Under the pieces are notes generated by a model. The model made no database searches, was not told the origin of the DNA, and saw only the letters and a program-made list of their open reading frames with translations. 64,000 nucleotides of DNA from Leidyana gryllorum EB-2025a (taxonomy: Eukaryota > Protista > Apicomplexa). Location: the NCBI GenBank assembly GCA_048772705.1, contig JBLWGC010000033.1:253744-317743 (forward strand), read 5' to 3'. Of this stretch, positions 12,298 to 32,655 are shown one piece after another (positions within the stretch are counted from its first letter, which is position 1; every line of letters begins with the position of its first letter). The translations under genes were made by a program, and so were the position numbers.

Positions 12298-14232
12298 CTA
12301 TTTGCGAGTCTCCGAGACCAATTTGTGTAATTTGGCAATGTTCGGGAACTTCTCGTTCCAGTTCTCAGAAATCCATCCAGAAGCTCCGATCACAAAGTCC
12401 GTCTCGTAGGCAATGTAAAAGTCGATCCACGACAGCTCGCCACCCACAGCGTAGCCCTCCTCTGATTGAGACAGTCCCAGAAGCTTCTCGACAATCTCAA
12501 GTTGCTTCTCAAAGTCGGGCTTGTTGGTCTCTCTGAGCGCATCGCGCTCGGGTCCCTCGGGAGCGGCATACGGCCGCGTCCTCACGTCCACCACGTTGTT
12601 GTACACAGAGTAGAGAGCCATGGCTTGGGAGCGGCCCTTCCAGGTGCGCGGGACGAGGTGTGCCCTTTCGGCGGCATACAGTACGCAGCCCAGAGTCTCG
12701 TAGATTCTGTCAGAGCCAACGTCCAGATAAGGACACTTGCCGGTGAGGGCCTCAGCTTTGAGAGTGTCTCTCCACTGATCCCACCCGAAGCGGAAGTCCT
12801 CAAAGTCAATGTTGCCGTATTTGAAGATCTGACGGATCGACTCGGCCCTTCCCGGGATGTCTCCGTAGACCAATTTGGGTGTGACCACCGGGAATCTCAA
12901 GAGATAGTCGGCAATGACCGGATGACTGACAACCAGTTGAGTGACCTTCGCGCAGTTGGGATAGTTTGTCCAGAGACCCTCAACGTGGATGCCGAGCAGT
13001 CGGGTATGAATCAGATTCATAATGTTGGCCACCAACAAGTCGGCGAAGCTGAGTTTGTCACCGACAATGTAGCCTTGTTTGGATTGTTTGAGGCCGACAA
13101 TGGCTTCCAGTCGGTTCAGAAGTGCGGGGAGAGTCTCTTCATTGACAATTTTGAGGTTCTTCGCCTTCTGCTCCTCATCAGTTTCTGTGTAAATAGTCTT
13201 CAAGATGGGCGAGATCGGAATGATGGTCATGCCAACAGAGTAAGCGTGAGCATAATGGCTGTCTTTCCAGGGCACCAGACCACTCTTGCTGGCGGCGTGA
13301 ATCACAGTCGCCACCGACTCTGTGAGAAACTCTCCTTCGGCAACCTCCAAGGCAGGCATAGTGCCAGCGGGGATCTTGGCTTTGAGTTCGGGCCAGTTCT
13401 CATCAGTGACAAAGACATTCTCATACTCGACTCCTCCAATCTCGAACGCCCAGCGGGTGGGGGCTGCCAAGCCATCAAAGTTGCGGTAGTAAAGACGAGG
13501 TTTCCATGGAGCCTTGGCACTCGTGTACTTTTTGACCGCCGGATGATTCTCGACGGCATCGTGAACACTCTGGATCTTGGGGTACTTGGCCGCGAACCCC
13601 TCCATGGCTTCAGGCACATAACTCTTCCAGTTGCGAACACTGGTGTACACAATAATGTCGGCGTAGCTCAACGAGTCAGCGAACAGCCATCCGTTCGGCG
13701 ACGGATTGATAGTCGCTTCAATCCGATCACAGATCGTCGGCATCGTTGCTGCGAGACGCCCGAGAATGGCCGCACGACGCTCCTGGAACGGCAGCTGGGT
13801 GCTCACGGCGTCTCCTTGACCCGTCAACTCCGCCAACATGCTCTGGATGCTGCGAGCGCGATCACGGTCAACCGGCAACTCCGGTGCGAGACCCGCACGA
13901 CGAGCCGCGAATGCCAGAATGGCACTCGACTGGACAATTGTCTCGCCATTCACTTCGAGGATGGGAAGTTGGCCGTGGGGAGTATACTTTTTGTACTTTG
14001 CCTCAAACTCCTCGTGGTTCTTGATACGACGGTCCACAAACTTGACGCCTCCCAAATGGAAAGTCAGACGCACTTGCTCTGCCAATCCCTCGCCGTCAAA
14101 GTAGGTCAACACCGGAATGCCGCCATAAGAAGCTCCGTCCATCGGGCCTCCACACATCCGATGTCCCGGGCTCTTCTCGCCGTTCGAGCCGTGACGGCGC
14201 GGTCCACGAGATTGACTTCGACTCTGAGCCAT
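12298..14232 (-). CDS. Triple-domain glutathione S-transferase A (3 fused sigma-like GST units)
   Basis: Three GST N-domain starts at aa 40 (PVLTYFD..GLAEQVR), 245 (PRLYY..GLAAPTR) and 452 (PKLVY..GRAESIR). Each has a cis-Pro loop (QLP/TMP/KCP) and a C-domain N-cap motif (LSYADI/LSFADL/LSWIDF). Confidence 0.92.
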   Translation of the reverse strand: MAQSRSQSRGPRRHGSNGEKSPGHRMCGGPMDGASYGGIPVLTYFDGEGLAEQVRLTFHLGGVKFVDRRIKNHEEFEAKYKKYTPHGQLPILEVNGETIVQSSAILAFAARRAGLAPELPVDRDRARSIQSMLAELTGQGDAVSTQLPFQERRAAILGRLAATMPTICDRIEATINPSPNGWLFADSLSYADIIVYTSVRNWKSYVPEAMEGFAAKYPKIQSVHDAVENHPAVKKYTSAKAPWKPRLYYRNFDGLAAPTRWAFEIGGVEYENVFVTDENWPELKAKIPAGTMPALEVAEGEFLTESVATVIHAASKSGLVPWKDSHYAHAYSVGMTIIPISPILKTIYTETDEEQKAKNLKIVNEETLPALLNRLEAIVGLKQSKQGYIVGDKLSFADLLVANIMNLIHTRLLGIHVEGLWTNYPNCAKVTQLVVSHPVIADYLLRFPVVTPKLVYGDIPGRAESIRQIFKYGNIDFEDFRFGWDQWRDTLKAEALTGKCPYLDVGSDRIYETLGCVLYAAERAHLVPRTWKGRSQAMALYSVYNNVVDVRTRPYAAPEGPERDALRETNKPDFEKQLEIVEKLLGLSQSEEGYAVGGELSWIDFYIAYETDFVIGASGWISENWNEKFPNIAKLHKLVSETRK

Positions 14233-14308
14233 TGTAATTGAGAGCTGAGGAATGAATCCAATACAATTTTTCTCTTAACAGAGATGAGGACTGATACAGT
14301 GTGTTGCT

Positions 14309-14364
14309 TGGGACACGCCATCGTGTCGTTGGGACACTGGAACATCTCATTTTCAAATGGGACA
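14309..14364. promoter_or_regulatory. Three TGGGACA elements upstream of GST A
   Basis: TGGGACA at 14309, 14330 and 14358, 77-132 bp upstream of the ATG. The same motif lies upstream of GST B, C, D and F. Confidence 0.55.
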
Positions 14365-14502
14365 TTCAATTGGAAGTGTCTGTGCCCTCAACGAGCATTG
14401 ATGGATCGATTGATTGATTGATAGAGTCTTTCAAAGTTTGACATGTGATCTGTTGTGCTTTTCACTGTACTGTATTACACAAAAAGGGACATTGAGAGTG
14501 GT

Positions 14503-16440
14503 CTATTTGCGGAGTTCCAAGACCAATTTGTGGAGCTTCGCAACGTTGGGGTACTTCTCGGTCCAGTTGTCCGGGAGCCAACCAGAGACTCCAGAGACAA
14601 AGTCGGTCTCGTAGGCAATGTAAAAGTCGATCCACGACAGCTCTCCGCCAACTGCATAGCCTTCGAGTGATTGAGACACAGCCAACACCTTCTCGACAAT
14701 GGCGAACTGTGTCTCAAAGTCGGGCTTGTTGGCCTCTCGGAGAGCATCACGCTCGGGTCCGGCGGGAGCCGCATAAGAACGGCTTCTGACATCCACTGTG
14801 TTGTTGTAGACAGAGTAGAGCGCCATGGCCTGAGAACGAGCCTTCCAGGTGCGCGGGACGAGGTGGGCTCTTTCGGCGGCATACATGACGCAGGCAACAG
14901 TCTCATAAATTCTGTCGGTACCAATGTCGAGGTAGGGGCACTTGCCGGTGAGAGCATTGGCCTTGTAGGTCTCGTTCCAGTCTTGGAAGGAGATACGAGT
15001 GTCTTCGAACTCGATGTTGCCGTATTTGAAGATCTGGCGAATGGCCTCTGCGCGAGCGCTGACGTCAAAGTAAGTCAGCTTGGGGGTGACCACAGGAGAC
15101 CGGAGGAGATAATCGCTCACAATTGGATGACTGATGACGAGATCGTAGACTTTCCGGCAGTTCGGGTAGGCGGTCCACAGATCCTTGACGACAATGTTCA
15201 GGTTGCGGGAAGCGACCATGTTCCAGACGTTCGCCACCAACAGGTCAGCAAAACTGAGTCTGTCTCCCACCACGTATCCCTGCTTAGACTGCTTGAGACC
15301 GACAATGGCTTCAAGTCGCCCGAGCAAGCTGGGCAGAGTCTCCTCATTGACGATCTTGAGGTTCTGAGCCTTCTCCTCCTCAGATGCCGCACCATAAATG
15401 CTCTTCCAGATGGGCGATAAGGGAACAATGGTGAGACCCACAGAGTACGCGTGGGCAAAGTGAGCCTCTCTCCAGGGGATGAGACCGGCGCGGCGGCACA
15501 CGTGGACGAGAATGGCCAGAGACTCGGTCAGGAACTCTCCCTCGGCAATCTCCAAAGCCGGCACGGTGCCAGCAGGAATCTTAGCCTTCACTGAAGGCCA
15601 CTCTTCGGAGGTGATTCTCTTGTCCTCGTACTCAATTCCGCCAATTTCGAAAGCCCAACGGATCGGAGCGGCCAAACCGTCCACGTTGTAGTAGTAGAGC
15701 TTCGGCTTGAAGGGGGTCTGATCCTCCCGGTACTTCCGGACGGCCGGATGCTCTTCGACCGCCTGATAGACCGAAGCCATTCGAGGGTACGTCTCGGTCC
15801 AATTCTCCAATTGTTCTGCCCCAAAGAACTTCATGAGCCGTACGGTGCAGTGGAGGGCAATGTCGGCGTAAGAGATAGTGTCGGCGAAGAGCCAGCCATT
15901 CTGGGAAGGCTTGATGGTAGCCTCAATACGAGCAGCGATAGTGGGCCACGTGGTCTCCATACGCTTCTTCATGCTCGCCACACGCTCCTCGGCCGAGAGG
16001 CTCGGGCTCGTCGCGTCGCTGATGCTCATCAGCTCCACCAGCATACTCTGGACAGAGCGAGCCTGGTCGCGATCGAGAGAGCTTTCTGGCACGAGACCAG
16101 CTCTCCGGGCCGCGTAGGCCATAATCGCCGCAGACTGTACAATGATCTCGCCATCCACCTCCAAAATGGGCAGTTGGCCGTGAGGAGTATAGGCCTTGAA
16201 CTTCTTGGCAAACTCTTCCTTGTCCTTCACCCGACGATCGACGAATTTGACTCCTCCCACCGCAAAGGTCAGACGAACTTGCTCCGCCAAGCCCTCCAAG
16301 TCAAAGTAAGTGAGAACAGGTGTGCTGCCTGGACCAGCATGACACGGACGCCCACCTCCACAGCCCATCGGCTTTCCGTGGTGAGGACCCTTTCCGCTCA
16401 GGGGTCCACGGCTTTGGCCTCGGTGCTTGTTTTGCATCAT
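14503..16440 (-). CDS. Triple-domain glutathione S-transferase B
   Basis: Same three-unit architecture as A. Start placed at MMQNKHRGQSRGP (16440) because it matches the A N-terminus (QSRGP) and the longer TTG-started extension contains the upstream motifs. Confidence 0.92.
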   Translation of the reverse strand: MMQNKHRGQSRGPLSGKGPHHGKPMGCGGGRPCHAGPGSTPVLTYFDLEGLAEQVRLTFAVGGVKFVDRRVKDKEEFAKKFKAYTPHGQLPILEVDGEIIVQSAAIMAYAARRAGLVPESSLDRDQARSVQSMLVELMSISDATSPSLSAEERVASMKKRMETTWPTIAARIEATIKPSQNGWLFADTISYADIALHCTVRLMKFFGAEQLENWTETYPRMASVYQAVEEHPAVRKYREDQTPFKPKLYYYNVDGLAAPIRWAFEIGGIEYEDKRITSEEWPSVKAKIPAGTVPALEIAEGEFLTESLAILVHVCRRAGLIPWREAHFAHAYSVGLTIVPLSPIWKSIYGAASEEEKAQNLKIVNEETLPSLLGRLEAIVGLKQSKQGYVVGDRLSFADLLVANVWNMVASRNLNIVVKDLWTAYPNCRKVYDLVISHPIVSDYLLRSPVVTPKLTYFDVSARAEAIRQIFKYGNIEFEDTRISFQDWNETYKANALTGKCPYLDIGTDRIYETVACVMYAAERAHLVPRTWKARSQAMALYSVYNNTVDVRSRSYAAPAGPERDALREANKPDFETQFAIVEKVLAVSQSLEGYAVGGELSWIDFYIAYETDFVSGVSGWLPDNWTEKYPNVAKLHKLVLELRK

Positions 16441-16527
16441 GATCCGGGAAGTGCTGGAAGTAGAAGTGTTGCGATGTGTAGGAGAGATGTCCTGAGTTTT
16501 TGGCAACCTGAAATAAAAGACTGCACT

Positions 16528-16700
16528 TGGGACATCGCTCAGCACTTTGGGACACCCATTGCCTTTTTGGTCCGCAGCTCTTATGCAAATCCTGGCTGCT
16601 GCTGCTGCACTCATCAAGTGGGAACTGATGATAATTGAGTGCTCGGCCTGGAAGAGAGTGTCTTGAAAGGGAGGAGATTGAAGCTGTCGACTTTGGGACA
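16528..16700. promoter_or_regulatory. TGGGACA elements upstream of GST B
   Basis: TGGGACA at 16528 and 16548 (both within GCACTT(T)GGGACA) and at 16694. Confidence 0.55.
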
Positions 16701-16986
16701 GCGGGGATTCAGTGGGTCGGGAGTGGGGGGGGCGTTGGTCGCGGTCGAAGAGTCGACGGTACCCCGATCCTGACCTCCTATTCTGATCACATCTCTTTGG
16801 TTCTTTCTCTGTCAGTGAGCGTACAGATTGTTGGTTCGAAGGTTAGAGGGTGTCAAGTCATCATCGGGGTGCAAAGGATCTATAATGAGTTGATGAGGGT
16901 GCTGAGAATGTCTCTGTTCGATCTTATTATGGCTAATAACTAAACATCGTATATCAACTTGGTGTCGTTAGACCAAAAAATGTCTC

Positions 16987-18927
16987 TTATTCAGTTGCGT
17001 TGGCAGCCACGTCTTCTCCCTCTCCTCCGTCTTCGTCGTCTTCTTCATCTTCTTCGTCAACAGGTGAAATATCCAAGACCAACTTGTACAACTTGGCCAA
17101 CTTGGGGAAGCTGGTTTCCCAGCCTTCTTGGAGTATGTTATCAGCTCTGTGCCAATACAGTTCGAAGGCGAGGGCAAAGTCGATGTAAGAGAGGCGGTTG
17201 TCGACTGCATAACCCTCAGCTGACTGGGTTGCACCCAATAATTTCTCCAAGATGGCAGCCTTCTCGAGGTAGAGTGGTCTGGACTCCTCCAAGAGAGTGG
17301 GTTCGGCTGTGCTAATATCTTCTGCACTGTACAATTTGGTGGTAATTGGAACGATATCGCAGTTGAAGAAGGACAGGAGACTAGCAGCAGCGGCACGTCC
17401 CATAGGGGTTATCGGCATGAGATCAGCGAGTTCTGCAACGTACTGCAGACACCCAGCCACCTCGTAGATCCGCGTTCCATCGACTTCAATGTATGGGACA
17501 TGTCCAGTGAGAGACTGTTGCTTGAGCTCAGTCAACCAGGCGTCATTAGAGAATCGATCGTTCTCGAAGTCAATGCCAGCATACTTGAGGATATGCTCAA
17601 TTGCTTCCGCTCGAGAGACGAGATCGAAATAGGTGAGCTTAATTTTCCTTGGAGAGGGAGTACATCCGTGTAAAACCGGATGACTCATTACTGTCTTGAA
17701 AACCTTCTTACAATTGGGGTATCGTGCGGAGAATTGCGGGATACGCACACCATCAATTCCGAGAAATGCCATTTGAACAACATTGGCTACATAGAGATCG
17801 GCAAACGTCAATCTATCAGCAACTGTATAGCCCTGAATCGACTGATTCTGCCCCACTATGACTTCCAGCCGATCGAATAATGCCGGCCCTGTCACCTCTG
17901 TCGCTATCCTCAGAGCTTCTTGGCGCTCTTCCTCACTGCTGTCTCCGACGCTCCTGACTATGGTGAACCACGGTCGGGCTGTCAGTACAGCAGCGTAGGC
18001 GTGGGCAAAATCAAACTCTTTACTGGGCTTCAGACCAATCTTGCTGCCTATGCTGACGAGCATAGCACAAGAATCGGTCATCCAGTCCCCATTGCCCAGA
18101 TCGAGGGCCGGTAGAATACCTCCAGGCACGCCGAGTTCCAGAGCTTCCTCCTCACTTGACACGCGACTGTGCTCAAAGGGCCTCCCCGTCAGTGTCAGAG
18201 CCCAGCGCACGGCCTCCACCGTGTGATCTGGCTCCAACGAGTAAAGCTTGAAGATCGTCGGTCCCCCCATATACTGCTGGATCACCGGGTGTGCCTCAAC
18301 CGCCTCACACACAGCCAGCAGTTTCGGGTAGCCCTCCAGGTGGATCGTACACCACTCCGGTGCCATCCCTCTCAGAAAGCGGATCATACAACGGATGACA
18401 ATGTCGGTGTAGGATATCTTGTCGTCAAAGACAAAGCCACTGGCGCCAGGGTTGATCATACTCTCAACACGCTCTAACATTAACGGGGCACTACGTTTCA
18501 TTCCCTCCGACACAACACTGATCCGATCCTCCTTGGACAGCGACTTGGAGACCATCTCAGAGACACCCAGTAATTCAGTGAACACAGAGTGTATCGAGCG
18601 AGCATGATCCTTGTTGATCTGACTGTCCGGCATCAGTCCGGCCCGTATCGCAGCGTACTGTAATATCGCGCCAGATTGAGTCAACATTTCGCCGTTAATC
18701 TCCAGGATAGGGAGCTGACCAGTAGGACTATATGACTTCCACTTTGACTCAAATTCGAGGTCGTCCGCCACACGTCGATCGACAAAGGGCACATTCCCAA
18801 CTAGAAAAGTCAACCGAATGGGCTCGCCCAAACCTTCATTCGAGAAATAGGTCAGTACCGGTTTGCCATAGTGAACACTCGGTGCCATGGTGTCAAGTTC
18901 TCGAGTCTTTACTGCCTTGTCAAACAT
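16987..18927 (-). CDS. Triple-domain glutathione S-transferase C with acidic C-tail
   Basis: PVLTYFSNEGLGEPIR / KLYSLEPDHTVEAVRW / KLTYFDLVSRAEAIE. Tail DEEDEEDDEDGGEGED. Alternative ATG at 18888. Confidence 0.9.
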   Translation of the reverse strand: MFDKAVKTRELDTMAPSVHYGKPVLTYFSNEGLGEPIRLTFLVGNVPFVDRRVADDLEFESKWKSYSPTGQLPILEINGEMLTQSGAILQYAAIRAGLMPDSQINKDHARSIHSVFTELLGVSEMVSKSLSKEDRISVVSEGMKRSAPLMLERVESMINPGASGFVFDDKISYTDIVIRCMIRFLRGMAPEWCTIHLEGYPKLLAVCEAVEAHPVIQQYMGGPTIFKLYSLEPDHTVEAVRWALTLTGRPFEHSRVSSEEEALELGVPGGILPALDLGNGDWMTDSCAMLVSIGSKIGLKPSKEFDFAHAYAAVLTARPWFTIVRSVGDSSEEERQEALRIATEVTGPALFDRLEVIVGQNQSIQGYTVADRLTFADLYVANVVQMAFLGIDGVRIPQFSARYPNCKKVFKTVMSHPVLHGCTPSPRKIKLTYFDLVSRAEAIEHILKYAGIDFENDRFSNDAWLTELKQQSLTGHVPYIEVDGTRIYEVAGCLQYVAELADLMPITPMGRAAAASLLSFFNCDIVPITTKLYSAEDISTAEPTLLEESRPLYLEKAAILEKLLGATQSAEGYAVDNRLSYIDFALAFELYWHRADNILQEGWETSFPKLAKLYKLVLDISPVDEEDEEDDEDGGEGEDVAANATE

Positions 18928-18943
18928 CTAAACATCCCCCCTT

Positions 18944-20085: not shown

Positions 20086-21939
20086 TCACAAATTCATCAC
20101 GAGATCGTAAGTTTTCGCGAGGTGGGTGTATTTGTCCTTCCATCCAGCCTGGAGGAACTCGACCCATTCGTTGTATTTGACTTCGTGCGCCAGGAAGAAA
20201 TCGATATACGTCAACTTGTTGTCGACACAGTATCCTTCTTCTGACTGATTGACGCCCACCAGCTTATCCAGAATGGCATAGAGGGATTCACACTTGGGTC
20301 TCAGCTCCTCTCTCTTCTCCGGGATTGTTTCCGCTGGTGAGCGATAGTGTTGAACGACAATGCTGAAGACATTCAGAGCTGTGTTGAAGATGGACAATGA
20401 CTGAGCTCGACCCCGCCAGGATGTCGGGGTCAAACCGGTCAATTCGGCGCAGTATTGGAAGCAACCAGCGATCTCAAACACCCGTTCCCCGGCAACGTCA
20501 ATGTAAGGTATCTTGTGGGTCAAAGATTGGGATTTGTACTCGTTGCACCACGTGTCCATGGAGACGCGATTGTCCTCAAATTCCACTTGGGCATATCTGA
20601 GGATGTGACGGATACCCTCTCCCCGGGAAGCGACATCAAAGTAGGTGAGTTTCGGGGTGCTGACAACTTCTCGGATTGTTAATCTTCTCACCACAGGATG
20701 GTTTCGGACGAGATTGAACACTTTGTCGCAGTGCGGAACAGAACTGAGCAAATTAGGGACCAACTTCTGACTCGGATCTGCGGCCTCCATGCAGATCGAC
20801 CACACCCAGATGTCCGCAACGGTCAATCGATTTCCCACACAATAGCCCTGGTGACTCTGTCTCAGAACCACCAAGACGTCCAATCGCTTGAACATCTCTG
20901 GAATGGTCTCTTCATAGGCCCTCTTGACGCTTTCCTCTTTCTCACTCTCCGGCGTCTCCCACTCCAGGATCCGGATCAGATTCTGAATTGAGCTCGCACT
21001 CGTCATCAACGTGTAAGCGTGAGCTGAGTCCGAGCTTTGGATCGGGAGCAGACCGCCCTTCCGAGCAACGTGGCAGCCGATAGCAATGCTCTCACTCAAC
21101 CAGTCGCCGTTGGGACATTGCAGCGCCGGCAGTGTTCCTCCAGGAACGGTAGGCTTCAGAGCCTTCCATTCGTCATCGGTACAACGGCAGTCCTCATAGT
21201 CTATTCCGCTGATTTCGAAGAGGATACGGATTGCGGCTCCCAGTCCTCTGACATTGAAGTAGTACAACTTGGGTTTGGTAGGGGACCGTTCCTCGTAGTG
21301 GTGGGCGACCACCGGGTGAGCTTCAACAGCTCTGTACACCTTCTCCAGACTGGGAACTGACGCCAAAAAGTCCTCCAGAACGAGAAGATCGCTATCCTTC
21401 AACGCATATATCATAGAGAAGACCGCGAGGTCGGCGTAGGAGAGTTTGTCGCCCACCAGCCATCCTCTCCCGGATGGAACCACCATAGCGTCCAGTCTCT
21501 TCAGGACCGGAAACCCATGCGTCTCCAACGACTTGGCCACTTGAATTCTCTTTTCGGCCTCCGCCAGATTGGGGTCGATAGTCTCGAAATCCGCAACAAT
21601 CTCGAAGATCATCGACTGTATCATCAAAGCCGCGTCTTGATCACGAGCCGACTCCGGCACCAGGCCACACTTCTTAGCCACATATTGAAGAATGGCCGCC
21701 GATTGTACCAATACTTTACCGTCGATCTCCAAAGTGGGTAGCTGACCAGTGGGCACCACTGCCTTCCACTTCGTACGGAACTCCTCCTTGTCTTTGACGC
21801 GCCGATCGACAAACGGGACGCCTCCCAACTTGAAGGCTAAACGAACCTGGTCACCCCAGCCAGGTAGATCAAAGTAAGTGAACGTAGCGAGTCCATTTTC
21901 AGAGCTAGCGCCTGGAGAAGTGTCGTTATTCAGAAACAT
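20086..21939 (-). CDS. Triple-domain glutathione S-transferase D
   Basis: TFTYFDLPGWGDQVR / PKLYYFNVRGLGAAIR / PKLTYFDVASRGEGIR, each followed by a GST C-domain motif (LSYADL, LTVADI, LTYIDF). Confidence 0.92.
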   Translation of the reverse strand: MFLNNDTSPGASSENGLATFTYFDLPGWGDQVRLAFKLGGVPFVDRRVKDKEEFRTKWKAVVPTGQLPTLEIDGKVLVQSAAILQYVAKKCGLVPESARDQDAALMIQSMIFEIVADFETIDPNLAEAEKRIQVAKSLETHGFPVLKRLDAMVVPSGRGWLVGDKLSYADLAVFSMIYALKDSDLLVLEDFLASVPSLEKVYRAVEAHPVVAHHYEERSPTKPKLYYFNVRGLGAAIRILFEISGIDYEDCRCTDDEWKALKPTVPGGTLPALQCPNGDWLSESIAIGCHVARKGGLLPIQSSDSAHAYTLMTSASSIQNLIRILEWETPESEKEESVKRAYEETIPEMFKRLDVLVVLRQSHQGYCVGNRLTVADIWVWSICMEAADPSQKLVPNLLSSVPHCDKVFNLVRNHPVVRRLTIREVVSTPKLTYFDVASRGEGIRHILRYAQVEFEDNRVSMDTWCNEYKSQSLTHKIPYIDVAGERVFEIAGCFQYCAELTGLTPTSWRGRAQSLSIFNTALNVFSIVVQHYRSPAETIPEKREELRPKCESLYAILDKLVGVNQSEEGYCVDNKLTYIDFFLAHEVKYNEWVEFLQAGWKDKYTHLAKTYDLVMNL

Positions 21940-22008
21940 TTGATTGTAGCCAGTGATCGGAAGGTATCAAATTTTCTCCTGACGACCTCTCCCAAATCCA
22001 GTGAACGC

Positions 22009-25321: not shown

Positions 25322-27895
25322 CTACGAGCTGTTTGCATCGCTCTTGTGCCCTTCCAAATACTGAGATTGTGCGACCACTTGCACAGTTCTTTCTTGACGG
25401 GTAACTGTGACCGTTCCGGAAGTGATTTCTTGTTGGAGTGTGGCGAATGTGTTTGAAGATTGTGAAAGTAATTCTTGATGGAGAGATGCCTCAGTTGATT
25501 GCGACGCAAGCTCGAGATCAGCGGCGAGATTCCAAGTACTCACGTTCTGCCTGTTTTGGGGATTGAAACACTGCGGCCGGGGGGACGAGCCGAAGATACC
25601 TTCGCGGGCGGCGGCTTCCGCCATCTCTTTGTCCAAAAGCTTAGGAATAAGGAGGTTGGGTACAACACCCGAGGCGATGGCGGCCTCGTCTAGGGCGTCG
25701 TCCATATGAAAATCGCTGATGCGGGTGGGGGGTTGGGGTTGCGTTGGGGTTGCCGTGGCTTCAGCTGTCGAGGAGGACATCATTGAACCTGGCCCTGTTC
25801 CTGTCTCTGTCGGCTGTGCATCTTGGTCAAGGGAATCTGGTGGTGTGTCTCCGTAGATGTCTCGTTCGGATTCAGAGTTCGGTATCAGCGTGACCCACCA
25901 CTCTTCGTCACGATTGTGCACCACCACTCGACCGTCGTCCCCGAAGACGTTTAACCTTTCGGGATTCTCAACTTTAGCCCCGCTGGTCTGAAGGAACTTG
26001 TGGAGATCCTCTCTCATGGTGTCTGACTTTTCCAGTTGGTAGATTAACGCGTGGAACGGGAATCGGGCGACTTGTAGGTCCCTGGCCTGGTCAAACATCA
26101 ACAGCCCTTGGCCCACGACGCTCTGGAGAACATGAGTGACGTCCTCTATAGTATCAACACTGTCGGTAGGCCACTTCACAGTTGCCGTGCCAGCCTCACA
26201 GTGCTCCACCAAGTTTACCTTCTTTGGCTCGTCTTGGGCATTCACAGTAAAGAGATAATGCCCATTGTCTTCTGCCGAGACATAATGCCCAAAGTCTTTG
26301 GACAAAAGTTTGAGATAACTGATATTCGTAAATTCTCTGAGGATCTTTCCAGTGGGCACCTTTACGCTTGTGACGTTAGGAGCCGGCTCCACGGGGGACG
26401 TCCTTCCACTCAGTCTCTTTGATGAAGGACTCGTTGGAATCTCTGGTCCATCGCTCGCCGGCACCTCGGAACCCATTTTAGTTACACCAAACTTCCTCCT
26501 CGGCGGTGATGCTGTACCATCACCCGTCTGAGGAGAGGTCGTTGTGTTGTCCTTCTTAGCCGCTGTGGCAGCAGTCGAAACAATTTTTCTCGGTGTCGTC
26601 GCGTTACCGCTCTTCGCCGCTGCGGCAGCAGTCGAAACAATTTTTCTCGGTGTCGTCGCGTTACCGCTCTTCGCCGCTGTGGCAGCAGTCGAAACAATTT
26701 TTCTCGGTGTCGTCGCGTTACCGCTCTTTGCAGTGATCGCCCTCGGTGTCCCGACAGTGCCTACCGGCTTTGCAGTCGCCCCCGCGCGGTGCAGAGAAAG
26801 ACGACTGCCTTTGAGAGTCGGACTCATCTTTGACACGTCAGCTGCAGAGCCTCTAAGGTTGGCTGAGCGTCCAGTAGCAGCAGCGGTAGGTTTCCTGCGG
26901 GAAGCAGCTGCGCGGGCGATGTCGAGTGTCGACCTGGATTTTGGGCGTTCTTTTTCAGCGGCGGCCAAGGGAGAAGAGTGCTTGTGCGATGCGGTGTCTT
27001 GAGATAGAGGTCGCGGTTTCCTGGTAGTGAATCGAGAGGGGACTTGGAAAGTGGGCGGGACAGCGTCTCGGCCCATGTCTTGATAGTTGAGGCTGGTTTT
27101 TGCCTGACAGCTCGGGAGGAGGATAAAGTAGGGGGCGAAACCGGGCTGATGATTGGCTTCCAAATCGCGGACGAAGGGTACAATCGCGTCCCTGTTCGCT
27201 ACGAAGAAGTCGATAAGTGTCGAATGCTCTCCGAGATCAATGCGGGTACTGCGAAAGCTGATCTTTGGGTTATCATACGGTCCCGATGCCTGTTGGGGCG
27301 ACTTTGTGATCGCCAAGTTGTACATTCCGGCCTGACCGCGGCGTATGAGCATTGACGCAAACTCGCCTCGTCTTGTGGGGAACCAAACTTGTAAAAGGGG
27401 TTCATTGGGGATGCTCGCGGCTGTTTTCGCCGCTGAGGCTGTTCTCAGTGGGGTTCTCCCTGCCGACCCTTTGCTCGCAGGTGGTGGAGACGTGCTGTCG
27501 CGATGGAGAACCATACAGCAACCGACGCTGTCACCATTGGCGAAAGGGAGGACTTTGGCTTTGTCCAAATGCGGGCTGGCCATAAAGTGGTTCCTCCTCT
27601 TCCTGGTGATGCTTATCATTTTGTTAACGTCTTCCACGGTGGGATACCCCGGCCCTTTCAGGACAGTGGCCATATTGTCCGGAGCCATCACATCCCGAAC
27701 GACCCCATCGGCAAATGTGGTCTTTTCCCACGAGTAGAATCCGTCAGATCGGCGTCCTACAGCCACTGTGCTCGAGGGGACGTTCTCAGTGATGCCAGCG
27801 TTATCCCAAACTCCCGCAACGGCAACAGACGCCACCCCTATCATAGAGGGGCCAGCGTCTTTGCCATTTGACAACGCTACTCTCGGGGGCCTCAT
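25322..27895 (-). CDS. Large hypothetical protein with a basic A/T/K-rich repeat region
   Basis: Long ORF (GTG at 28006, first ATG 27895). Globular-looking N- and C-regions flank a basic low-complexity core. Both termini are uncertain. Confidence 0.65.
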   Translation of the reverse strand: MRPPRVALSNGKDAGPSMIGVASVAVAGVWDNAGITENVPSSTVAVGRRSDGFYSWEKTTFADGVVRDVMAPDNMATVLKGPGYPTVEDVNKMISITRKRRNHFMASPHLDKAKVLPFANGDSVGCCMVLHRDSTSPPPASKGSAGRTPLRTASAAKTAASIPNEPLLQVWFPTRRGEFASMLIRRGQAGMYNLAITKSPQQASGPYDNPKISFRSTRIDLGEHSTLIDFFVANRDAIVPFVRDLEANHQPGFAPYFILLPSCQAKTSLNYQDMGRDAVPPTFQVPSRFTTRKPRPLSQDTASHKHSSPLAAAEKERPKSRSTLDIARAAASRRKPTAAATGRSANLRGSAADVSKMSPTLKGSRLSLHRAGATAKPVGTVGTPRAITAKSGNATTPRKIVSTAATAAKSGNATTPRKIVSTAAAAAKSGNATTPRKIVSTAATAAKKDNTTTSPQTGDGTASPPRRKFGVTKMGSEVPASDGPEIPTSPSSKRLSGRTSPVEPAPNVTSVKVPTGKILREFTNISYLKLLSKDFGHYVSAEDNGHYLFTVNAQDEPKKVNLVEHCEAGTATVKWPTDSVDTIEDVTHVLQSVVGQGLLMFDQARDLQVARFPFHALIYQLEKSDTMREDLHKFLQTSGAKVENPERLNVFGDDGRVVVHNRDEEWWVTLIPNSESERDIYGDTPPDSLDQDAQPTETGTGPGSMMSSSTAEATATPTQPQPPTRISDFHMDDALDEAAIASGVVPNLLIPKLLDKEMAEAAAREGIFGSSPRPQCFNPQNRQNVSTWNLAADLELASQSTEASLHQELLSQSSNTFATLQQEITSGTVTVTRQERTVQVVAQSQYLEGHKSDANSS
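26561..26731. repeat. 57-bp tandem repeat x3 (19-aa unit AKSGNATTPRKIVSTAATA on the minus strand)
   Basis: Near-identical units start at 26561, 26618 and 26675. Confidence 0.95.
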
Positions 27896-28078
27896 AAGAC
27901 AAACAATTAACTCGCTCAAAGCGTCAAAAGAATTGTAATTTTGGGTGAAGTGCAATGTCGTTCTGATAGCTGTTATCAATTCGATTGCCTTTGTTCGTTT
28001 GTCCACGTTGGTGTAATCAATTGATCAAAATGGTCGGCGAGCCTCACAGATATATTATCTCTCTCTCTCTTTCTCGCC

Positions 28079-29938
28079 TCACTTTCGCTCGAGCCCTTTG
28101 ACCAAATTGTACACTTTGGCCAAAGCTGGATACTTCTCCTGCCAGTCCTCAGGGAGGAAACCGCAGTCTCCATTGTAGCTCAACTCGTAGGTCACATAGA
28201 AATCAATGTACGAAAGTTCATTGTCGACACAGTATCCTTCAGCAGATTGTTGCAAAGCCACAATCTTCTCCCACATGTCGAGTTGAACAAAGTATTCGGG
28301 CCTCAATTCAACCGCCTTGGCTCTCCTCTCATCACCAGCCGGCGCTGCGTAATGCTTCAACACTACTTTGTGCACGTTGGAGTGAACCGAGAAGATCGAT
28401 AGAGCCTGAGCTCTGCCCTTCCAGGAACGAGGCATCATGTTGGTCAACTCGGCGACGTATTGCAGACAACCGATGATCTCATAGATTCGAAGGTCGCCAA
28501 TGTCGAGGAAGGGAACCTGACCCGTCAACGATTGCGGCTTCACCTCAGTGAAGAAAGCCTTGAAGCCCACTCGGTGGTCTTCAAACTCAACGTTTCCATA
28601 TTCCAATAGCTTCCGGATGTGCTCAGCGCGTCCCGGCAGCTCAAAGTAAGTGAGCTTCGGCTTGCAGACCACACCGCGGAATCGCTCCTTCTTCACTGCC
28701 GGATGATTCAGAATCAAATTAGTCACTTTGTTGCAACACGGCATCTCCTTCAGCAGGTTGGGAATAGTGCCATTCAAACCCTCCATGGCCAATACGCCCG
28801 CGAAAGCGACATAGCAGTCAGCGAATGACAATCTGTCACCGACCACGTATCCCTGATGAGACTGACGCAGAGCCACTATCGACTCCAACCGCCGGAAAGC
28901 CGCCGGAAGTGTCTCCTCACGAGCCAACTTCTTGGCCGCCGCACCCTCCTCGGGAGTTGCAGCGTGCATTACACTGCGAACAATGGCTCCCACACCAGCC
29001 ATCGACAACACAATGCTGTACGCGTGGGCAAAATCGTTGTCGCGGAACGGCGTCAAACCAGTCATGCGTGCCACCGAGATGGCGATCGCACTCGACTCAG
29101 TCAACCACGTGCCGTCTCCGAGCTGAAGAGCGGGGAGGACACCTCCGGGGATGGTGGGCTTCATTGCAGGCCACTCAGCCTTCTCGACACGGATGTCCTC
29201 GTACTCGATTCCGCCAATGGCCAACATCCAACGGATGGGAGTTGCGATTCCCTCACCGTTGAAATAGTACAACTTGGGCTTCGTCGGACTGCTCTTCTTC
29301 AGATATGCAACCATACCGGGATGACCCAACACAGCCTTGTAGGCTCCAGCGATCTTGGGGAACTTCTCCTTCAGCACGGCAGCCGTCTCCGCATCGAGCT
29401 CAGACGCCAGCGCCAAGGTGTAATAGAGGGCAACATCGATGAATGACAGACGATCTCCCACGATCCAACCATTCGCGGAGGGATTGATGGTCGCCTCAAT
29501 ACGCCCGAAGATCACTGGAACGTTCTCTTTCCACAAAGCCTGCATCTTGGAGTAACGCTCTTCACGCGGAAGACTCGCAGGAACTATCGCGGTGCGGCTT
29601 TGAAGCTCCACCATCATCGACAGCACAGCCATACAGATATCCTGGTCACGAGGGTTCTCAGGGAAGAGTCCAGCTCGCTTCGCAGCGTATAGCACAATAC
29701 TCTGTGACTCACATAGAATTTGGCCATCGACTTCGAGAATTGGGACCAAACCCGTGGGAGAGTACGCCTTGTACTTGGCTTCGAATTCGGCGTGATCCTT
29801 CACTCGTCTGTCAACAAAGTTGACATTGCCAAGGTTGAACAGAATGCGAATGGGTTCTGCCAGCCCCTTGACGTCAAAGTACGTCAGCACCGGAACACCT
29901 TCGCGTCTACGATGCATGTCGCCGGAAGTATGATGCAT
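28079..29938 (-). CDS. Triple-domain glutathione S-transferase F
   Basis: PVLTYFDVKGLAEPIR / PKLYYFNGEGIATPIR / PKLTYFELPGRAEHIR. First ATG at 29938. Confidence 0.92.
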   Translation of the reverse strand: MHHTSGDMHRRREGVPVLTYFDVKGLAEPIRILFNLGNVNFVDRRVKDHAEFEAKYKAYSPTGLVPILEVDGQILCESQSIVLYAAKRAGLFPENPRDQDICMAVLSMMVELQSRTAIVPASLPREERYSKMQALWKENVPVIFGRIEATINPSANGWIVGDRLSFIDVALYYTLALASELDAETAAVLKEKFPKIAGAYKAVLGHPGMVAYLKKSSPTKPKLYYFNGEGIATPIRWMLAIGGIEYEDIRVEKAEWPAMKPTIPGGVLPALQLGDGTWLTESSAIAISVARMTGLTPFRDNDFAHAYSIVLSMAGVGAIVRSVMHAATPEEGAAAKKLAREETLPAAFRRLESIVALRQSHQGYVVGDRLSFADCYVAFAGVLAMEGLNGTIPNLLKEMPCCNKVTNLILNHPAVKKERFRGVVCKPKLTYFELPGRAEHIRKLLEYGNVEFEDHRVGFKAFFTEVKPQSLTGQVPFLDIGDLRIYEIIGCLQYVAELTNMMPRSWKGRAQALSIFSVHSNVHKVVLKHYAAPAGDERRAKAVELRPEYFVQLDMWEKIVALQQSAEGYCVDNELSYIDFYVTYELSYNGDCGFLPEDWQEKYPALAKVYNLVKGLERK

Positions 29939-30013
29939 TGTGATAAGAGGACAGTAGAAAGGCACAAACTGAAGATTTAGGAGAGAAATACCGCAAAATC
30001 AAATTTTGGCATT

Positions 30014-30039
30014 TGGGACATCGGTGTCCCAATTGGGAC
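30014..30039. promoter_or_regulatory. Triple alternating TGGGACA / TGTCCCA / TGGGAC element upstream of GST F
   Basis: tgggaca-tcgg-tgtccca-at-tgggac, 76-101 bp upstream of the ATG. Confidence 0.6.
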
Positions 30040-30134
30040 TTTTTGCCATTTTCGGGACGACTGCTCAGAGTTGTTGCTGCAGCGGCAATTACTTGACGGG
30101 GGCGGCTTCTAATATTATTACTATGTGATTTGAG

Positions 30135-31994
30135 CTAAGCATCGTAAACTGAAACTAGTAAAGGCTTTGTTTTCTGAGGGCGGGCGCTGGTCTGCTTATC
30201 GGTGGGGGAACGCAAAGCGAGTACGAGTTGGCGGTTCTTGGCAATTTTGGGGAAGCGATTCTCCCAGCCATCCTGCAGCATCGTTCTGTAGATGGCCCAG
30301 TTGACTTCGTAGGCAAGATAGAAATCGATGTACGAGAGAGCGTTGCCAACGCAATAACCTTCATCGCTCTGCTGGAGGCAGATCAGCTCTTCCACAGTAT
30401 CGAGCTCAGAAGCGAATAGGGGTCTGTATTTGTCGAGGAGAGTGGGCAACTGCTCAGGCGATGCAACAGCGACTTGTCGCATGAAGCCCCGGCAATTGTT
30501 AAATGCACTAAAAATGGCCAGAGCATGTGCGTGTCCGAACAAGGATCTGGGAAGCAAGTTGGCTAGTTCGGCTGCGTAGGTTATGCAGCCGAAGACTTCG
30601 TATATTCTGTCTTGACCGATTTGTAGGAACGGCATCTTTCCGGTGGCACTCTCTGATTTGAGGGAGGCGACCCACTGATCTCTGGGTACCAGGATATCCT
30701 CGAAATCAATTTGTGCGTATTTGAATAGCTGTCTGATAGATTCAGCTCGTCCAGATACGGGGAAATAGTATAGTTGGGGTTTGGGGCTGTCTAGTTTGAG
30801 TCTCCTCTGCACTATGGGGTGAGACATGACCATTTGGTAGACTTGGGCGAGGTGGGGCCACTTGGATCGAATATCTTTGACATGAACGCCCCAAGGCTTC
30901 TGGAAGAGACAATGGAGGACGTTGGCCACAAGAAGGTCCACCCTGGTCAGCTTGTCCTCCACGATGTATCCCTGCCGAGACAGTGTCGAGCCCACCAAAA
31001 CCTCGGCCTTGTCCAGCGAGGCGGGAAGATCGACCTCGCTGGCCGTCTTTGTGATGGTGTCTTTCTCCCACTCCGGGGCGAGATAGACATCTCTCATAAT
31101 GTGTCCGTAAGACAACATAGCGGACTCGACCGCGCATGAGTGGTTGTACGCCTTCTCAGAACCGACCGGGGAGAGCACGTAATCCCGGTCAACCTGTTTC
31201 AAAATTGACAATGCGTCACGCGTAACATCTCCAGTCTCATGATCGTACAGTAGAGGCAGCATGGCCCCGCGATTTTGGATTTTGATCGCTGTCCATTCCT
31301 CACAAGTCACTCTCTCCTCACCGATTGCGACGCCGCATATGTCGAAAGCCCAACGAATGGCATCCGAAATGCCGTCAAAGTCATGGTATTCGAGGGTATA
31401 CAGCGGTTCCGTTCTACGGTCCTGAAACTCTCGCACAACCGGGAGTTCACTAACGTTGAGATAAAATATTTGACACGGTAGATACCACACGGCGGCAGAG
31501 ACGTGTTGCGCCTCCTTACACTGTTTGAGGAAGCGATCGAAGGCGCAATAGAGTGCAATGTCGGCGACGGTCATCTGATCTCCGAAAATGTAGCGATCTC
31601 TCTCCTTTGATGCTCGTCTCAGCAATGATGCAAGCCGCTGAAAGAGACTCTTAGTGACAGTTGCGCCTTCCCCTTCCTGCTGCCACGCATCAATGGAAAG
31701 CGAGAAGACTTCACACAAACACGAGTGGATCGCTAAAGTCTCGGGACACTTGCAGATAAAGTCTGGCCCCAAAGCCTGCTTCGCAACATACAGGAAAATT
31801 GCCTCGGGCTCCGTTATCAACTCGGTACCGACTTGGAGGGAGGGCAACGCTTGTGTGGACGGATGATTGATACTGACGGGGAGTATGGTGATGAGTGGTA
31901 TTAGATATAGGTGGGAAGCGAGAAGGATCGTCTGCACCAATACAGGCGCAGTGTCTGCTCGAAGATGTCTGAAAACCACCTTGTCAGATGTCAT
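30135..31994 (-). CDS. Divergent triple-domain GST G (unit 1 degenerate)
   Basis: Unit 1 keeps only ALPSLQV...ITEPEAI and YIFGDQMTVADI. Unit 2 TLEYHDFDGISDAIRW. Unit 3 is intact: PQLYYFPVSGRAESIR...LSYIDF. Confidence 0.85.
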   Translation of the reverse strand: MTSDKVVFRHLRADTAPVLVQTILLASHLYLIPLITILPVSINHPSTQALPSLQVGTELITEPEAIFLYVAKQALGPDFICKCPETLAIHSCLCEVFSLSIDAWQQEGEGATVTKSLFQRLASLLRRASKERDRYIFGDQMTVADIALYCAFDRFLKQCKEAQHVSAAVWYLPCQIFYLNVSELPVVREFQDRRTEPLYTLEYHDFDGISDAIRWAFDICGVAIGEERVTCEEWTAIKIQNRGAMLPLLYDHETGDVTRDALSILKQVDRDYVLSPVGSEKAYNHSCAVESAMLSYGHIMRDVYLAPEWEKDTITKTASEVDLPASLDKAEVLVGSTLSRQGYIVEDKLTRVDLLVANVLHCLFQKPWGVHVKDIRSKWPHLAQVYQMVMSHPIVQRRLKLDSPKPQLYYFPVSGRAESIRQLFKYAQIDFEDILVPRDQWVASLKSESATGKMPFLQIGQDRIYEVFGCITYAAELANLLPRSLFGHAHALAIFSAFNNCRGFMRQVAVASPEQLPTLLDKYRPLFASELDTVEELICLQQSDEGYCVGNALSYIDFYLAYEVNWAIYRTMLQDGWENRFPKIAKNRQLVLALRSPTDKQTSARPQKTKPLLVSVYDA

Positions 31995-32028
31995 CTTTCG
32001 TTCGTTTTACAATGGCAAAAAGTGACGA

Positions 32029-32655
32029 CTAAATAGAAGAAGCAGACTTTGAACGTGTGCGAGTGTAGAATTCCACGACTTTGGGATGATTCTTGATCAT
32101 CCGATGAATTTGAGACAGCTTGGGAAAGTGGCGGTCAGTATGTGGTATTATTACGCCGAAGGGGTTGTCGTGAACAAACTCAATTGCTGCGTACACGAGA
32201 AGATCGGCCGGGGTTACAGTGTTACCCACACAATACCCTGTTGCGGTTACTGTTTTCTCTATCAAACATAACCCCTGATGAACCGTATTAATGGCAACAG
32301 GGACGCGAGCGGGTCTATCGGCAGGCGTAGCGCGTATAATCGGAACAACCGCTCCCGATAAGGTGTCACACATTTGACAAATCTGTTCAGAGCGAAGAGC
32401 ATGAAGGGGATCAGAGGGCTCGATTCCACTCTGACGCGCGGCATAATTCAGCATAGCTATGGGCTCAGCGAAACGCTGGCCATCCACCTCCAAGATCGGG
32501 AATGTACCCGTAGGCGACACGTGGGCATACTGTGGCATGTCGCATATGTCGAATCGGCGGTCCTCAATCTCCACATCCCCAAGCGCGAATGCAAGTCGTA
32601 TCGCGTGAGCTCTCCCCGGCACATCGGCGTAGTACAGGATCGGGCTGGAGGACAT
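32029..32655 (-). CDS. Single-domain sigma-like glutathione S-transferase H (208 aa)
   Basis: PILYYADVPGRAHAIRL, GTFPILEVDG, GYCVGNTVTPADL. First ATG at 32655. Confidence 0.9.
   Translation of the reverse strand: MSSSPILYYADVPGRAHAIRLAFALGDVEIEDRRFDICDMPQYAHVSPTGTFPILEVDGQRFAEPIAMLNYAARQSGIEPSDPLHALRSEQICQMCDTLSGAVVPIIRATPADRPARVPVAINTVHQGLCLIEKTVTATGYCVGNTVTPADLLVYAAIEFVHDNPFGVIIPHTDRHFPKLSQIHRMIKNHPKVVEFYTRTRSKSASSI

What the first reader, a model, noticed from the sequence alone, without database searches (positions are those of the whole stretch)
12298..32655. Array of seven genes each encoding three fused glutathione S-transferase units (triple-GSTs)
Seen: seven co-oriented, intronless 617-646 aa ORFs each contain three GST units about 205 aa apart (gene A units start at aa 40, 245, 452). 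Linkers are only a few residues (e.g. HPAVKKYTSAKAPWKPRLYY). With gene H this is 22 GST units in 20 kb. Established: cytosolic GSTs are ~200-230 aa single-unit polypeptides that work as obligate dimers, and Plasmodium has a single cytosolic GST. Inference: an odd number of dimerising units cannot all pair within one chain, so these proteins should form two-chain six-unit particles, hetero-oligomers between paralogues or open polymers. This could be a lineage-specific detoxification/ligandin or structural system (compare sigma-GST-derived S-crystallins). I do not know of a described triple-GST family in apicomplexans.
Basis: partly seen in the sequence, partly recalled or inferred. Interest (0 to 1): 0.92.

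Follow-up and report, generated by a model that had tools for sequence, protein, structure and literature searches.

The report
Gregarine array of triple-GST fusion genes
A small gut parasite of insects (a gregarine) carries seven neighbouring genes that each string three different glutathione S-transferase enzymes into one protein. The design is real, old, shared with related gregarines, rare elsewhere and, as far as I could find, never studied.

Summary
Seven co-oriented minus-strand ORFs (617-646 aa, 12298-31994) each hold three full GST units joined by 5-6-residue linkers. A single-unit GST (32029-32655) sits at the upstream end.

- **Organism:** a eugregarine. Its HSP90 is 79% identical to Protomagalhaensia and 74% to Gregarina niphandrodes. 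The genome is 15.5 Mb.
- **More copies:** two further triple-GST genes lie on another contig.
- **Origin:** units at one position in different genes are 42-46% identical; units within one gene are about 25% identical. The unit tree groups by position, so the fusion came first and whole-gene tandem duplication followed.
- **Relatives:** co-linear triple-length proteins occur in transcriptomes of Gregarina spp., Protomagalhaensia wolfi and Blabericola migrator. Their middle unit is degenerate.
- **Elsewhere:** double GST fusions are scattered across eukaryotes. Independent triples are very rare (one sawfly protein).
- **Class:** units are Tyr-type and sigma-like, TM 0.78-0.86 to sigma GSTs and prostaglandin D synthases. 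The A/B pair shows dN/dS of 0.12-0.21 in all three units.
- **Quaternary structure:** unresolved. AlphaFold gives three confident folds but no defined packing, and a docking test gave only weak support.
- **Gaps:** no RNA or protein data exist for this organism, and I found no paper on the family.

The scan noted this same stretch before in an overlapping window, not on other DNA.

Verdict: a new variant of a known kind, of moderate interest.

The parts
12298..14232 (-). Triple-GST gene A (644 aa). Units: u1 13504-14115, u2 12883-13503, u3 12301-12882.
   Evidence: ORF. Pfam finds 3x GST_C_3 at E 7e-42. Unit bounds. Closest paralogue is B (62/69/77% identity per unit). dN/dS against B is 0.21/0.12/0.14.
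14503..16440 (-). Triple-GST gene B (645 aa from the ATG at 16440; the open frame runs up to 16617). Units: u1 15709-16320, u2 15088-15708, u3 14506-15087.
   Evidence: The start was chosen by alignment with A's N-terminus. TGGGACA copies at 16528 and 16548 lie upstream of it, as they do upstream of A.
16987..18927 (-). Triple-GST gene C (646 aa, acidic C-terminal tail). Units: u1 18256-18861, u2 17647-18255, u3 16990-17646.
   Evidence: Unit 2 has Ser in place of the catalytic Tyr.
20086..21939 (-). Triple-GST gene D (617 aa). Units: u1 21277-21888, u2 20659-21276, u3 20089-20658.
   Evidence: The AlphaFold2 model has mean pLDDT 86.7 with three GST folds, linkers at aa 218-223 and 425-429, and pTM 0.43. 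Foldseek gives TM 0.78-0.84 per unit to sigma-class GSTs.
22910..24772 (-). Triple-GST gene E (620 aa). Units: u1 24119-24727, u2 23501-24118, u3 22913-23500.
   Evidence: The Tyr position is Phe in u1 (with Tyr one residue later) and Asp in u2.
28079..29938 (-). Triple-GST gene F (619 aa from the ATG at 29938). Units: u1 29282-29893, u2 28664-29281, u3 28082-28663.
30135..31994 (-). Triple-GST gene G (619 aa), the most diverged copy. Unit 1 (31404-31946) lacks the beta1-alpha1 segment. Other units: u2 30783-31403, u3 30138-30782.
   Evidence: Pfam finds 3x GST_C_3, but GST_N only in unit 3. Alignment gap. Key residues. Unit 1 is 20-26% identical to the other u1 units, whereas u3 is 39-45%.
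32029..32655 (-). Single-unit GST gene H (208 aa). Its stop codon lies 34 bp upstream of G's ATG.
   Evidence: Pfam finds GST_N and GST_C_3. In the unit tree it groups with the genome's other single GSTs, not with any unit of the triples. The 34-bp gap was read.
25322..28006 (-). Unrelated 894-aa ORF that interrupts the array between E and F. It is not a GST.
   Evidence: No Pfam family. It contains three tandem 17-residue Ala/Ser/Thr/Lys-rich repeats.

Best explanation
**What it is.** These are members of a eugregarine-specific family of cytosolic, Tyr-type, sigma-like glutathione S-transferases. Three already-diverged GST units were fused head to tail into one polypeptide of about 70 kDa.

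**History.** The fusion happened once, before this organism split from Gregarina, Protomagalhaensia and Blabericola. In this lineage the whole three-unit gene was then duplicated in tandem, giving the seven-gene array. A separate pair of genes lies on another contig.

**How it most likely works (inferred).** Each protein is made and used as one chain. It carries up to three glutathione sites with position-specific chemistry.
- Unit 3 keeps the full Tyr plus Arg sigma signature.
- Units 1 and 2 keep Tyr and the Gln/Glu-Ser pair but lack the Arg.
- Some middle or first units have lost the Tyr and probably serve as structural partners.

The family most likely does glutathione-dependent conjugation, reduction or isomerisation, or ligand binding. 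This would protect the extracellular trophozoite in the insect gut. Tandem expansion would diversify substrate range, as in other detoxification gene clusters. How the three units pack, and whether chains pair, is not known.
For: **Shown**
- Every gene has three GST units.
- The nine genes of this genome are co-linear.
- Same-position units are 42-46% identical between genes. Units within a gene are about 25% identical.
- In the unit tree all 21 gregarine u1 units form one group (support 81). A-G form starred clades at each position (96, 99, 99).
- Single clades for u3 and for u2 are not rejected (p-AU 0.38 and 0.36).
- Triple-length co-linear proteins occur in transcriptome-derived protein sets of four other eugregarines. 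Their middle region is homologous to u2 (hhalign probability 98%, E 1.5e-13).
- Fusions in oomycetes, a starfish and a sawfly group by organism, so they are independent.
- Best solved relatives are sigma-class GSTs and prostaglandin D synthases (E down to 5e-20; TM 0.78-0.86).
- The cis-Pro and the N-cap Asp are kept in 21 of 21 units. Tyr is kept in 5/7, 5/7 and 7/7 units by position. Arg is kept only in u3, in 7/7.
- A versus B gives dN/dS of 0.21, 0.12 and 0.14 for the three units.
- All other pairs are saturated at silent sites yet keep open frames.
- No hydrophobic N-terminal stretch is visible.

**Supportive from the literature**
- Gregarine GST contigs of 2156 and 2616 nt were prominent in a cockroach whole-body transcriptome (PMC8856671).
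Against: - There is no RNA or protein evidence for this organism; no sequencing run was listed.
- No enzymatic data exist for any member.
- Identity to sigma-class structures is only 23-29%. Class assignment and substrates are therefore guesses.
- Unit 3 mostly has Val or Ile where Ser or Thr normally binds glutathione. Several units lack the Tyr. Some sites may be weak or dead.
- AlphaFold2 gives no confident inter-unit arrangement (pTM 0.43 and 0.58).
- The detoxification role is an argument from family and lifestyle, not a result.
Confidence: 0.62

Rival explanations
1. **Processed polyprotein.** The three-unit chain is a precursor that is cut at the short linkers into three single GSTs. 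These then form ordinary dimers, possibly heterodimers.
For: - Unit boundaries are sharp and the linkers short.
- Alveolates such as dinoflagellates are known to make polyproteins of repeated enzyme units (own knowledge).
- No protein-size data argue against it.
Against: - Units within a gene are only about 25% identical, with stable position-specific signatures. Known polyproteins carry near-identical repeats.
- Linkers of 5-6 residues show no conserved cleavage motif across paralogues.
- A degenerate middle unit is retained in other genera. That is hard to explain if the units act alone.
- The genome already encodes at least eight single-unit GSTs.
Confidence: 0.1
2. **Mainly non-catalytic protein.** This would be a ligand-binding or structural role, like S-crystallins derived from sigma GSTs, perhaps attached to the cell cortex.
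For: - The Tyr or whole G-site elements are lost in G u1, C u2, E u2 and the u2 of both C159 genes. The middle unit of other genera is degenerate.
- Several members have Cys-, His-, Gly- and Pro-rich N-terminal extensions. One possible start of B reads Met-Gly-Cys, which resembles an acylation motif.
- Octopus S-crystallin is among the structural matches.
Against: - Unit 3 keeps Tyr and Arg in all seven genes, and most u1 and u2 units keep Tyr and Gln/Glu-Ser.
- The N-terminal Cys motifs are not conserved across A-G.
- There are no abundance or localisation data.
Confidence: 0.15
3. **Prostaglandin D synthase-like enzymes.** They would be used to modulate the insect host, as proposed for sigma-class GSTs of parasitic worms.
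For: Onchocerca and insect prostaglandin D synthases and human H-PGDS are among the best sequence and fold matches.
Against: - No signal peptide is visible.
- Similarity to PGDS is no greater than to non-PGDS sigma GSTs.
- Nothing here tests substrate.
Confidence: 0.08
4. **Artefact.** Three adjacent single genes would be read through, or the assembly would be wrong.
For: None found.
Against: - Nine genes keep 617-751 codons open with in-register units.
- Independent transcriptome and assembly data from other organisms give the same layout.
Confidence: 0.01

Closest known systems
Sigma-class GSTs and GSH-dependent prostaglandin D synthases (Ascaris GST1 4q5f, Onchocerca 2hnl, Drosophila GST-2 1m0u, Sh28GST, human H-PGDS)
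   Same: - Each unit has the same fold (TM 0.78-0.86).
- The catalytic Tyr sits at the end of beta1.
- The cis-Pro, the Gln/Glu-Ser pair and the N-cap Asp are present.
- Unit 3 also keeps the Gly-Arg-Ala-Glu motif.
   Different: - Three units sit in one chain with 5-6-residue linkers.
- Identity is only 23-29%.
- Units 1 and 2 lack the Arg. Unit 3 mostly lacks the Ser/Thr.
Leishmania TDR1 (4AGS) and Trypanosoma cruzi Tc52: two GST domains per chain
   Same: - It is the only solved GST with more than one GST domain in a chain.
- It is the top Foldseek hit by E-value for both models.
- It arose by duplication, divergence and fusion (PMC4138524 citing Fyfe et al. 2012).
   Different: - TDR1 has two units, not three.
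- It is Cys-type and omega-like, not Tyr-type and sigma-like (own knowledge).
- The relative domain placement does not superpose (rmsd 11-15 A, TM 0.35-0.37).
- It is an independent origin.
Uncharacterised double sigma-like GST fusions, and the sawfly triple
   Same: Head-to-tail fusion of sigma-like units. Examples are Pythium insidiosum GLD91570.1, Globisporangium polare, Acanthaster planci XP_022081115.1, Antedon, Polychytrium, Watersipora, Athalia and Tubulanus. The sawfly Neodiprion pinetum XP_046480277.1 is a 726-aa triple.
   Different: - Their units group with each other, so they are recent independent fusions.
- None forms a multi-gene family with position-specific lineages like the gregarine one.
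- The sawfly triple has longer linkers of 50-70 aa.
GST-homology domain chain of the multi-tRNA-synthetase complex (MRS-AIMP3-EPRS-AIMP2)
   Same: It shows that GST folds can line up in an open row by using two different interfaces in turn (own knowledge; related paper PMC6760448 listed). It is a possible model for how three tethered units pack.
   Different: - Those domains sit on separate chains.
- They are non-catalytic and unrelated in sequence class.
- Nothing here tests this packing.

Membership tests
Cytosolic (soluble) GST superfamily | An N-terminal thioredoxin-like domain followed by an all-helical C-terminal domain | tested here: met
   Pfam finds GST_N and GST_C_3 three times per protein. 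The AlphaFold2 secondary structure shows beta-alpha-beta-alpha-beta-beta-alpha plus a helical bundle, three times. Foldseek gives TM about 0.8 per unit.
Cytosolic (soluble) GST superfamily | Glutathione-site residues: cis-Pro before beta3, Gln/Glu-Ser/Thr at beta4-alpha3, and an N-cap Ser/Thr-x-x-Asp in alpha6 | tested here: met
   The cis-Pro and the Asp are kept in 21 of 21 units. Gln/Glu/Asp is kept in 21 of 21. Ser/Thr is kept in 6/7 u1, 6/7 u2 and only 2/7 u3.
Sigma-class GST | A catalytic Tyr near the N-terminus | tested here: met
   Tyr is present in 17 of 21 units. It is lost in E u1 (shifted by one residue), G u1, C u2 and E u2.
Sigma-class GST | At least about 40% identity to class members (the conventional class rule) | tested here: not met
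   Identity to solved sigma GSTs is 23-29%. The units are best called sigma-like and unclassified.
Sigma-class GST | A homodimer through the canonical two-fold interface | tested here: inconclusive
   - Monomer models give pTM 0.43 and 0.58.
- The docking test of unit 3 (two copies) against units 1-2 scored 0.51, against a best control of 0.15. The verdict was 'weak support'. The mark was reached by 51 of 78 solved complexes and 2 of 108 mismatched pairs. A score of 0.60 or under was seen in only 5 of those 78 solved complexes and in all 4 mismatches that passed.
- Runs agreed in at least 76% of their contacts, and partner pLDDT was at least 80.
- No interface was given.
TDR1/Tc52-type fused GST | Two GST domains in one chain, with a Cys-type active site and a trimeric assembly | tested here: not met
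   There are three domains and a Tyr-type site. The domain arrangement does not superpose on 4AGS (TM 0.35-0.37). Oligomeric state is not testable here.
Eugregarine triple-GST family (proposed here) | Three co-linear units, each falling in its own position-specific lineage across species | tested here: met
Polyprotein of repeated enzyme units | Near-identical repeats separated by conserved cleavable linkers, with the mature protein being single units | tested here: not met
   Units are about 25% identical. No conserved linker motif is seen. The size of the mature protein is not testable with these tools.

The most novel reading that the evidence does not exclude
The three tethered units use two different GST-GST interfaces to build a defined multi-unit particle. 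This could be an intrachain pseudo-dimer plus an interchain pair, giving a six-unit body, or a closed pseudo-trimer. The middle unit would evolve into a catalytically dead scaffold. That would be a quaternary form not yet seen for soluble GSTs. It would also be a natural example of an enzyme subunit turning into a built-in pseudo-enzyme partner.
Probability: 0.25. Interest if true: 0.65.

Novelty: new variant of a known kind. Interest (0 to 1): 0.55.

Why it matters
- **For GST biochemistry.** Soluble GSTs are a textbook case of single-unit chains that pair up. An old, conserved and expanded family of three-unit chains lets one ask what fusion buys: fixed stoichiometry of different sites, cooperativity, or a scaffold role for a decaying unit.
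- **For gregarine biology.** This genome carries about 37 GST units. That compares with three GST genes in each Cryptosporidium species (PMC7683740) and, from general knowledge, one in Plasmodium. It points to a heavy investment in glutathione chemistry by an extracellular gut parasite.
- **For annotation.** These proteins sit unremarked in several public transcriptomes.

Tried and rejected
- **Word-indexed protein search.** It was run with gene D and with a 20-sequence profile. It returned only 3-4 distant hits and missed the gregarine relatives that the exhaustive HMMER search found. Its blanks mean nothing, and whether Gregarina niphandrodes has a triple could not be settled.
- **Sequencing runs.** None was listed for 12200-22100, so read laying was not used and expression here is untested.
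- **Docking test.** Chain 1 was D residues 1-426 and the partner was D 427-617 in two copies. The verdict was 'weak support': score 0.51 against a best control of 0.15. The mark was reached by 51 of 78 solved complexes and 2 of 108 mismatched pairs. A score of 0.60 or under was seen in only 5 of those 78 and in all 4 mismatches that passed. Runs agreed in at least 76% of contacts, and partner pLDDT was at least 80. No interface was given. It may reflect memory of solved GST dimers, so I do not claim binding from it.
- **AlphaFold2.** The full length (pTM 0.43) and units 2-3 (pTM 0.58) gave no defined packing. Neither model superposes on TDR1.
- **His/Pro/Gly-rich ORF at 22327-22662.** I tested whether it is an upstream exon of D. 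It lies on the opposite strand, so the idea was rejected.
- **H plus G as one four-unit gene.** I considered this. A stop codon and 34 bp separate them, no productive splice is evident, and H groups with single GSTs.
- **Literature.** Six searches found no paper on triple or tandem GST fusions in gregarines. The TDR1 paper itself is not held.
- **Spliced model of the C159 gene.** Its two exons were put into local alignments and the unit tree with an X at the break. The joined form was sent to no search or folding tool.
Full report
**1. What is there**

Between 12298 and 32655 the minus strand carries eight GST genes.
- Seven genes, A to G, have uninterrupted frames of 617-646 codons.
- B and F open upstream of their likely ATG. 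I placed B's start at 16440 and F's at 29938, by alignment with the paralogues.
- Pfam finds three GST_C_3 stretches in each of the seven, with whole-protein E from 1.6e-20 to 7e-42. It finds two or three GST_N stretches in A-F.
- H (32029-32655) is a single GST.

Two details were not in the finding.
- G's first unit has lost beta1-alpha1.
- An unrelated 894-aa ORF with no Pfam match sits between E and F on the same strand.

**2. Whose genome**

The assembly is 15.5 Mb in 237 contigs, and the window has about 52-53% G+C. Its HSP90 is closest to Protomagalhaensia sp. (79%), Gregarina sp. and Gregarina niphandrodes (74%). Chromerids, Cryptosporidium and Plasmodium follow.

**3. The rest of the family in this genome**

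A six-frame search with GST_C_3 gives 35 matches.
- Contig C159 holds two more triples.
  - One is a 751-aa ORF with a long His/Pro/Gly-rich N-terminal extension.
  - The other reads as two overlapping ORFs of 468 and 242 aa. The break is a 53-nt GT-AG interval, and removing it restores the family alignment. I take it for a short intron.
- Contigs C104 and C230 hold three and four tandem single-unit GSTs.
- The genome therefore has nine triples and at least eight singles.

**4. Order of events**

- The nine triples align end to end.
- Units in the same position of different genes are 42-46% identical. Units within a gene are 17-32% identical, mean 25%.
- I built a maximum-likelihood tree of 96 units. 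All 21 gregarine first units form one group (support 81).
- A-G form a starred clade at each of the three positions (96, 99, 99).
- Holding all third units together, or all second units together, is not rejected (p-AU 0.38 and 0.36).
- So the fusion preceded the gene duplications, and the seven-gene array arose by duplication of the whole three-unit gene in this lineage.
- The duplications are old. Only A/B has unsaturated silent sites (dS 1.1-2.0). Its dN/dS is 0.21, 0.12 and 0.14 for units 1, 2 and 3, so all three units are under purifying selection.

**5. Elsewhere**

An exhaustive profile search of 1.84 billion representatives gave 8209 hits at E <= 0.001 and 79 at E <= 1e-30.
- The two best hits are full co-linear triples from Logan assemblies.
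  - P0125 has 627 aa and E 1.9e-156. It is a lone gene on a 6.7-kb contig.
  - P0126 has 701 aa and is the counterpart of the C159 gene.
- Next come triple-length proteins from EukProt transcriptome sets of Gregarina sp. Poly1, Gregarina sp. Pseudo9, Protomagalhaensia wolfi and Blabericola migrator.
  - Their first and third units are clear.
  - Their middle 170-210 residues are very diverged but homologous to unit 2 over its whole length (hhalign 98%, E 1.5e-13). They lack the glutathione-site residues.
  - These sets come from assembled transcripts. They show that in relatives the three units lie on one message.
- Gregarines also have two-unit proteins that match units 2-3 (P0129, P0138, P0142).
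- Outside gregarines, about half of the best 150 hits are two-unit fusions (76). They come from oomycetes, echinoderms, a chytrid, a bryozoan, a nemertean and sawflies.
- One 726-aa sawfly protein has three units. In the tree these units group by organism, so they are independent fusions.
- The triple layout as a conserved, multi-gene family is thus confined to eugregarines in current public data.

**6. What kind of GST**

- By sequence, the best solved relatives are sigma-class enzymes and GSH-dependent prostaglandin D synthases (E 5e-20 to 1e-15). Alpha class comes next.
- By fold, each unit matches them at TM 0.78-0.86.
- Identity is only 23-29%, below the usual 40% class rule. I call the units sigma-like.
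- Key residues are position-specific.

| Residue | Unit 1 | Unit 2 | Unit 3 |
|---|---|---|---|
| Catalytic Tyr | 5/7 | 5/7 | 7/7 |
| Arg of the Gly-Arg-Ala-Glu motif | 0/7 | 0/7 | 7/7 |
| Ser/Thr after Gln/Glu | 6/7 | 6/7 | 2/7 |
| cis-Pro and N-cap Asp | all | all | all |

- No N-terminus has a hydrophobic signal-like stretch.

**7. Shape**

- AlphaFold2 with a 20-sequence alignment gives three confident GST folds for D (mean pLDDT 86.7). Linkers are 6 and 5 residues long (aa 218-223 and 425-429).
- Its pTM is only 0.43. Units 2-3 alone give pLDDT 90.9 and pTM 0.58. The models do not define how the units sit against each other.
- The top Foldseek hit by E-value is Leishmania TDR1, the one solved GST with two domains per chain. 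The two-domain superposition is poor (rmsd 11-15 A, TM 0.35-0.37).
- One docking test put units 1-2 against two copies of unit 3 and returned 'weak support': score 0.51, best control 0.15.
  - The mark was reached by 51 of 78 solved complexes and 2 of 108 mismatched pairs. A score of 0.60 or under was seen in only 5 of those 78 and in all 4 passing mismatches.
  - Runs agreed in at least 76% of contacts, and partner pLDDT was at least 80. No interface was given.
- I make no binding claim from it.

**8. Best reading**

*Shown:* an old, single fusion of three diverged sigma-like GST units. It is conserved across eugregarines, expanded here by tandem duplication, and kept under purifying selection in all three units.

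*Inferred:*
- The proteins act as single cytosolic chains of about 70 kDa with up to three different glutathione sites.
- Their work is glutathione-dependent detoxification or ligand binding in the insect gut.
- The middle unit tends to become a structural partner.

*Rivals:*
- A cleaved polyprotein is disfavoured by 25% inter-unit identity, the absence of a linker motif and the retained dead middle units.
- A mainly structural or ligandin role is possible.
- A prostaglandin-synthase role is untested.
- An artefact is excluded by cross-species co-linearity.

**9. Novelty**

I found no paper describing this family. One cockroach transcriptome study lists gregarine GST contigs of 2156 and 2616 nt without comment on their length (PMC8856671). 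Fused GSTs are known in principle, for example TDR1 (PMC4138524). This is therefore a new variant of a known kind, not a new kind.

**10. Housekeeping**

- The spliced C159 gene was handled exon by exon. It was joined only with an X inside local alignments, and the joined form was not searched or folded.

Noticed in passing
window 14309-30031: TGGGACA is not enriched in the window as a whole: 15 copies against 11.3 expected. But 12 of the 15 lie inside the GST array. Most sit on the + strand, 17-130 bp upstream of the ATGs of A (three copies), B, C, D and F. At F they form an inverted pair. This may be a shared promoter element.
   Followed up: partly
window 25322-28006 (-): An 894-aa ORF with no Pfam match is embedded in the GST array. 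It carries three tandem copies of a 17-residue Ala/Ser/Thr/Lys-rich repeat.
   Followed up: no
window 22327-22662 (+): A 111-aa His/Pro/Gly-rich ORF lies between D and E, on the strand opposite the GST genes. Its composition resembles the N-terminal extension of the C159 triple GST, but it is not an exon of D.
   Followed up: partly
L001 (G000:C159:243000-252999) 4394-8817 (-): This is a second triple-GST locus. One gene of 751 aa has a His/Pro/Gly/Arg-rich N-terminal extension of about 155 aa. A second gene is interrupted by a 53-nt GT-AG interval at 5084-5136.
   Followed up: yes
L004/L005 (G000:C159:7347-11953): The HSP90 gene changes frame near profile position 235-253, which also suggests a short intron. 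Genes in this genome are therefore not all intronless.
   Followed up: no
L002 (G000:C104) 3707-5820 and L003 (G000:C230) 3640-8136: Two further tandem clusters hold three and four single-unit sigma-like GST genes. The genome's total is about 37 GST units.
   Followed up: partly
window 16189-16191 and N-termini of P0132, P0133, P0126: Several family members have Cys-rich N-terminal stretches. An internal Met of B is followed by Gly-Cys, which resembles a dual-acylation motif. The feature is not conserved across A-G.
   Followed up: no
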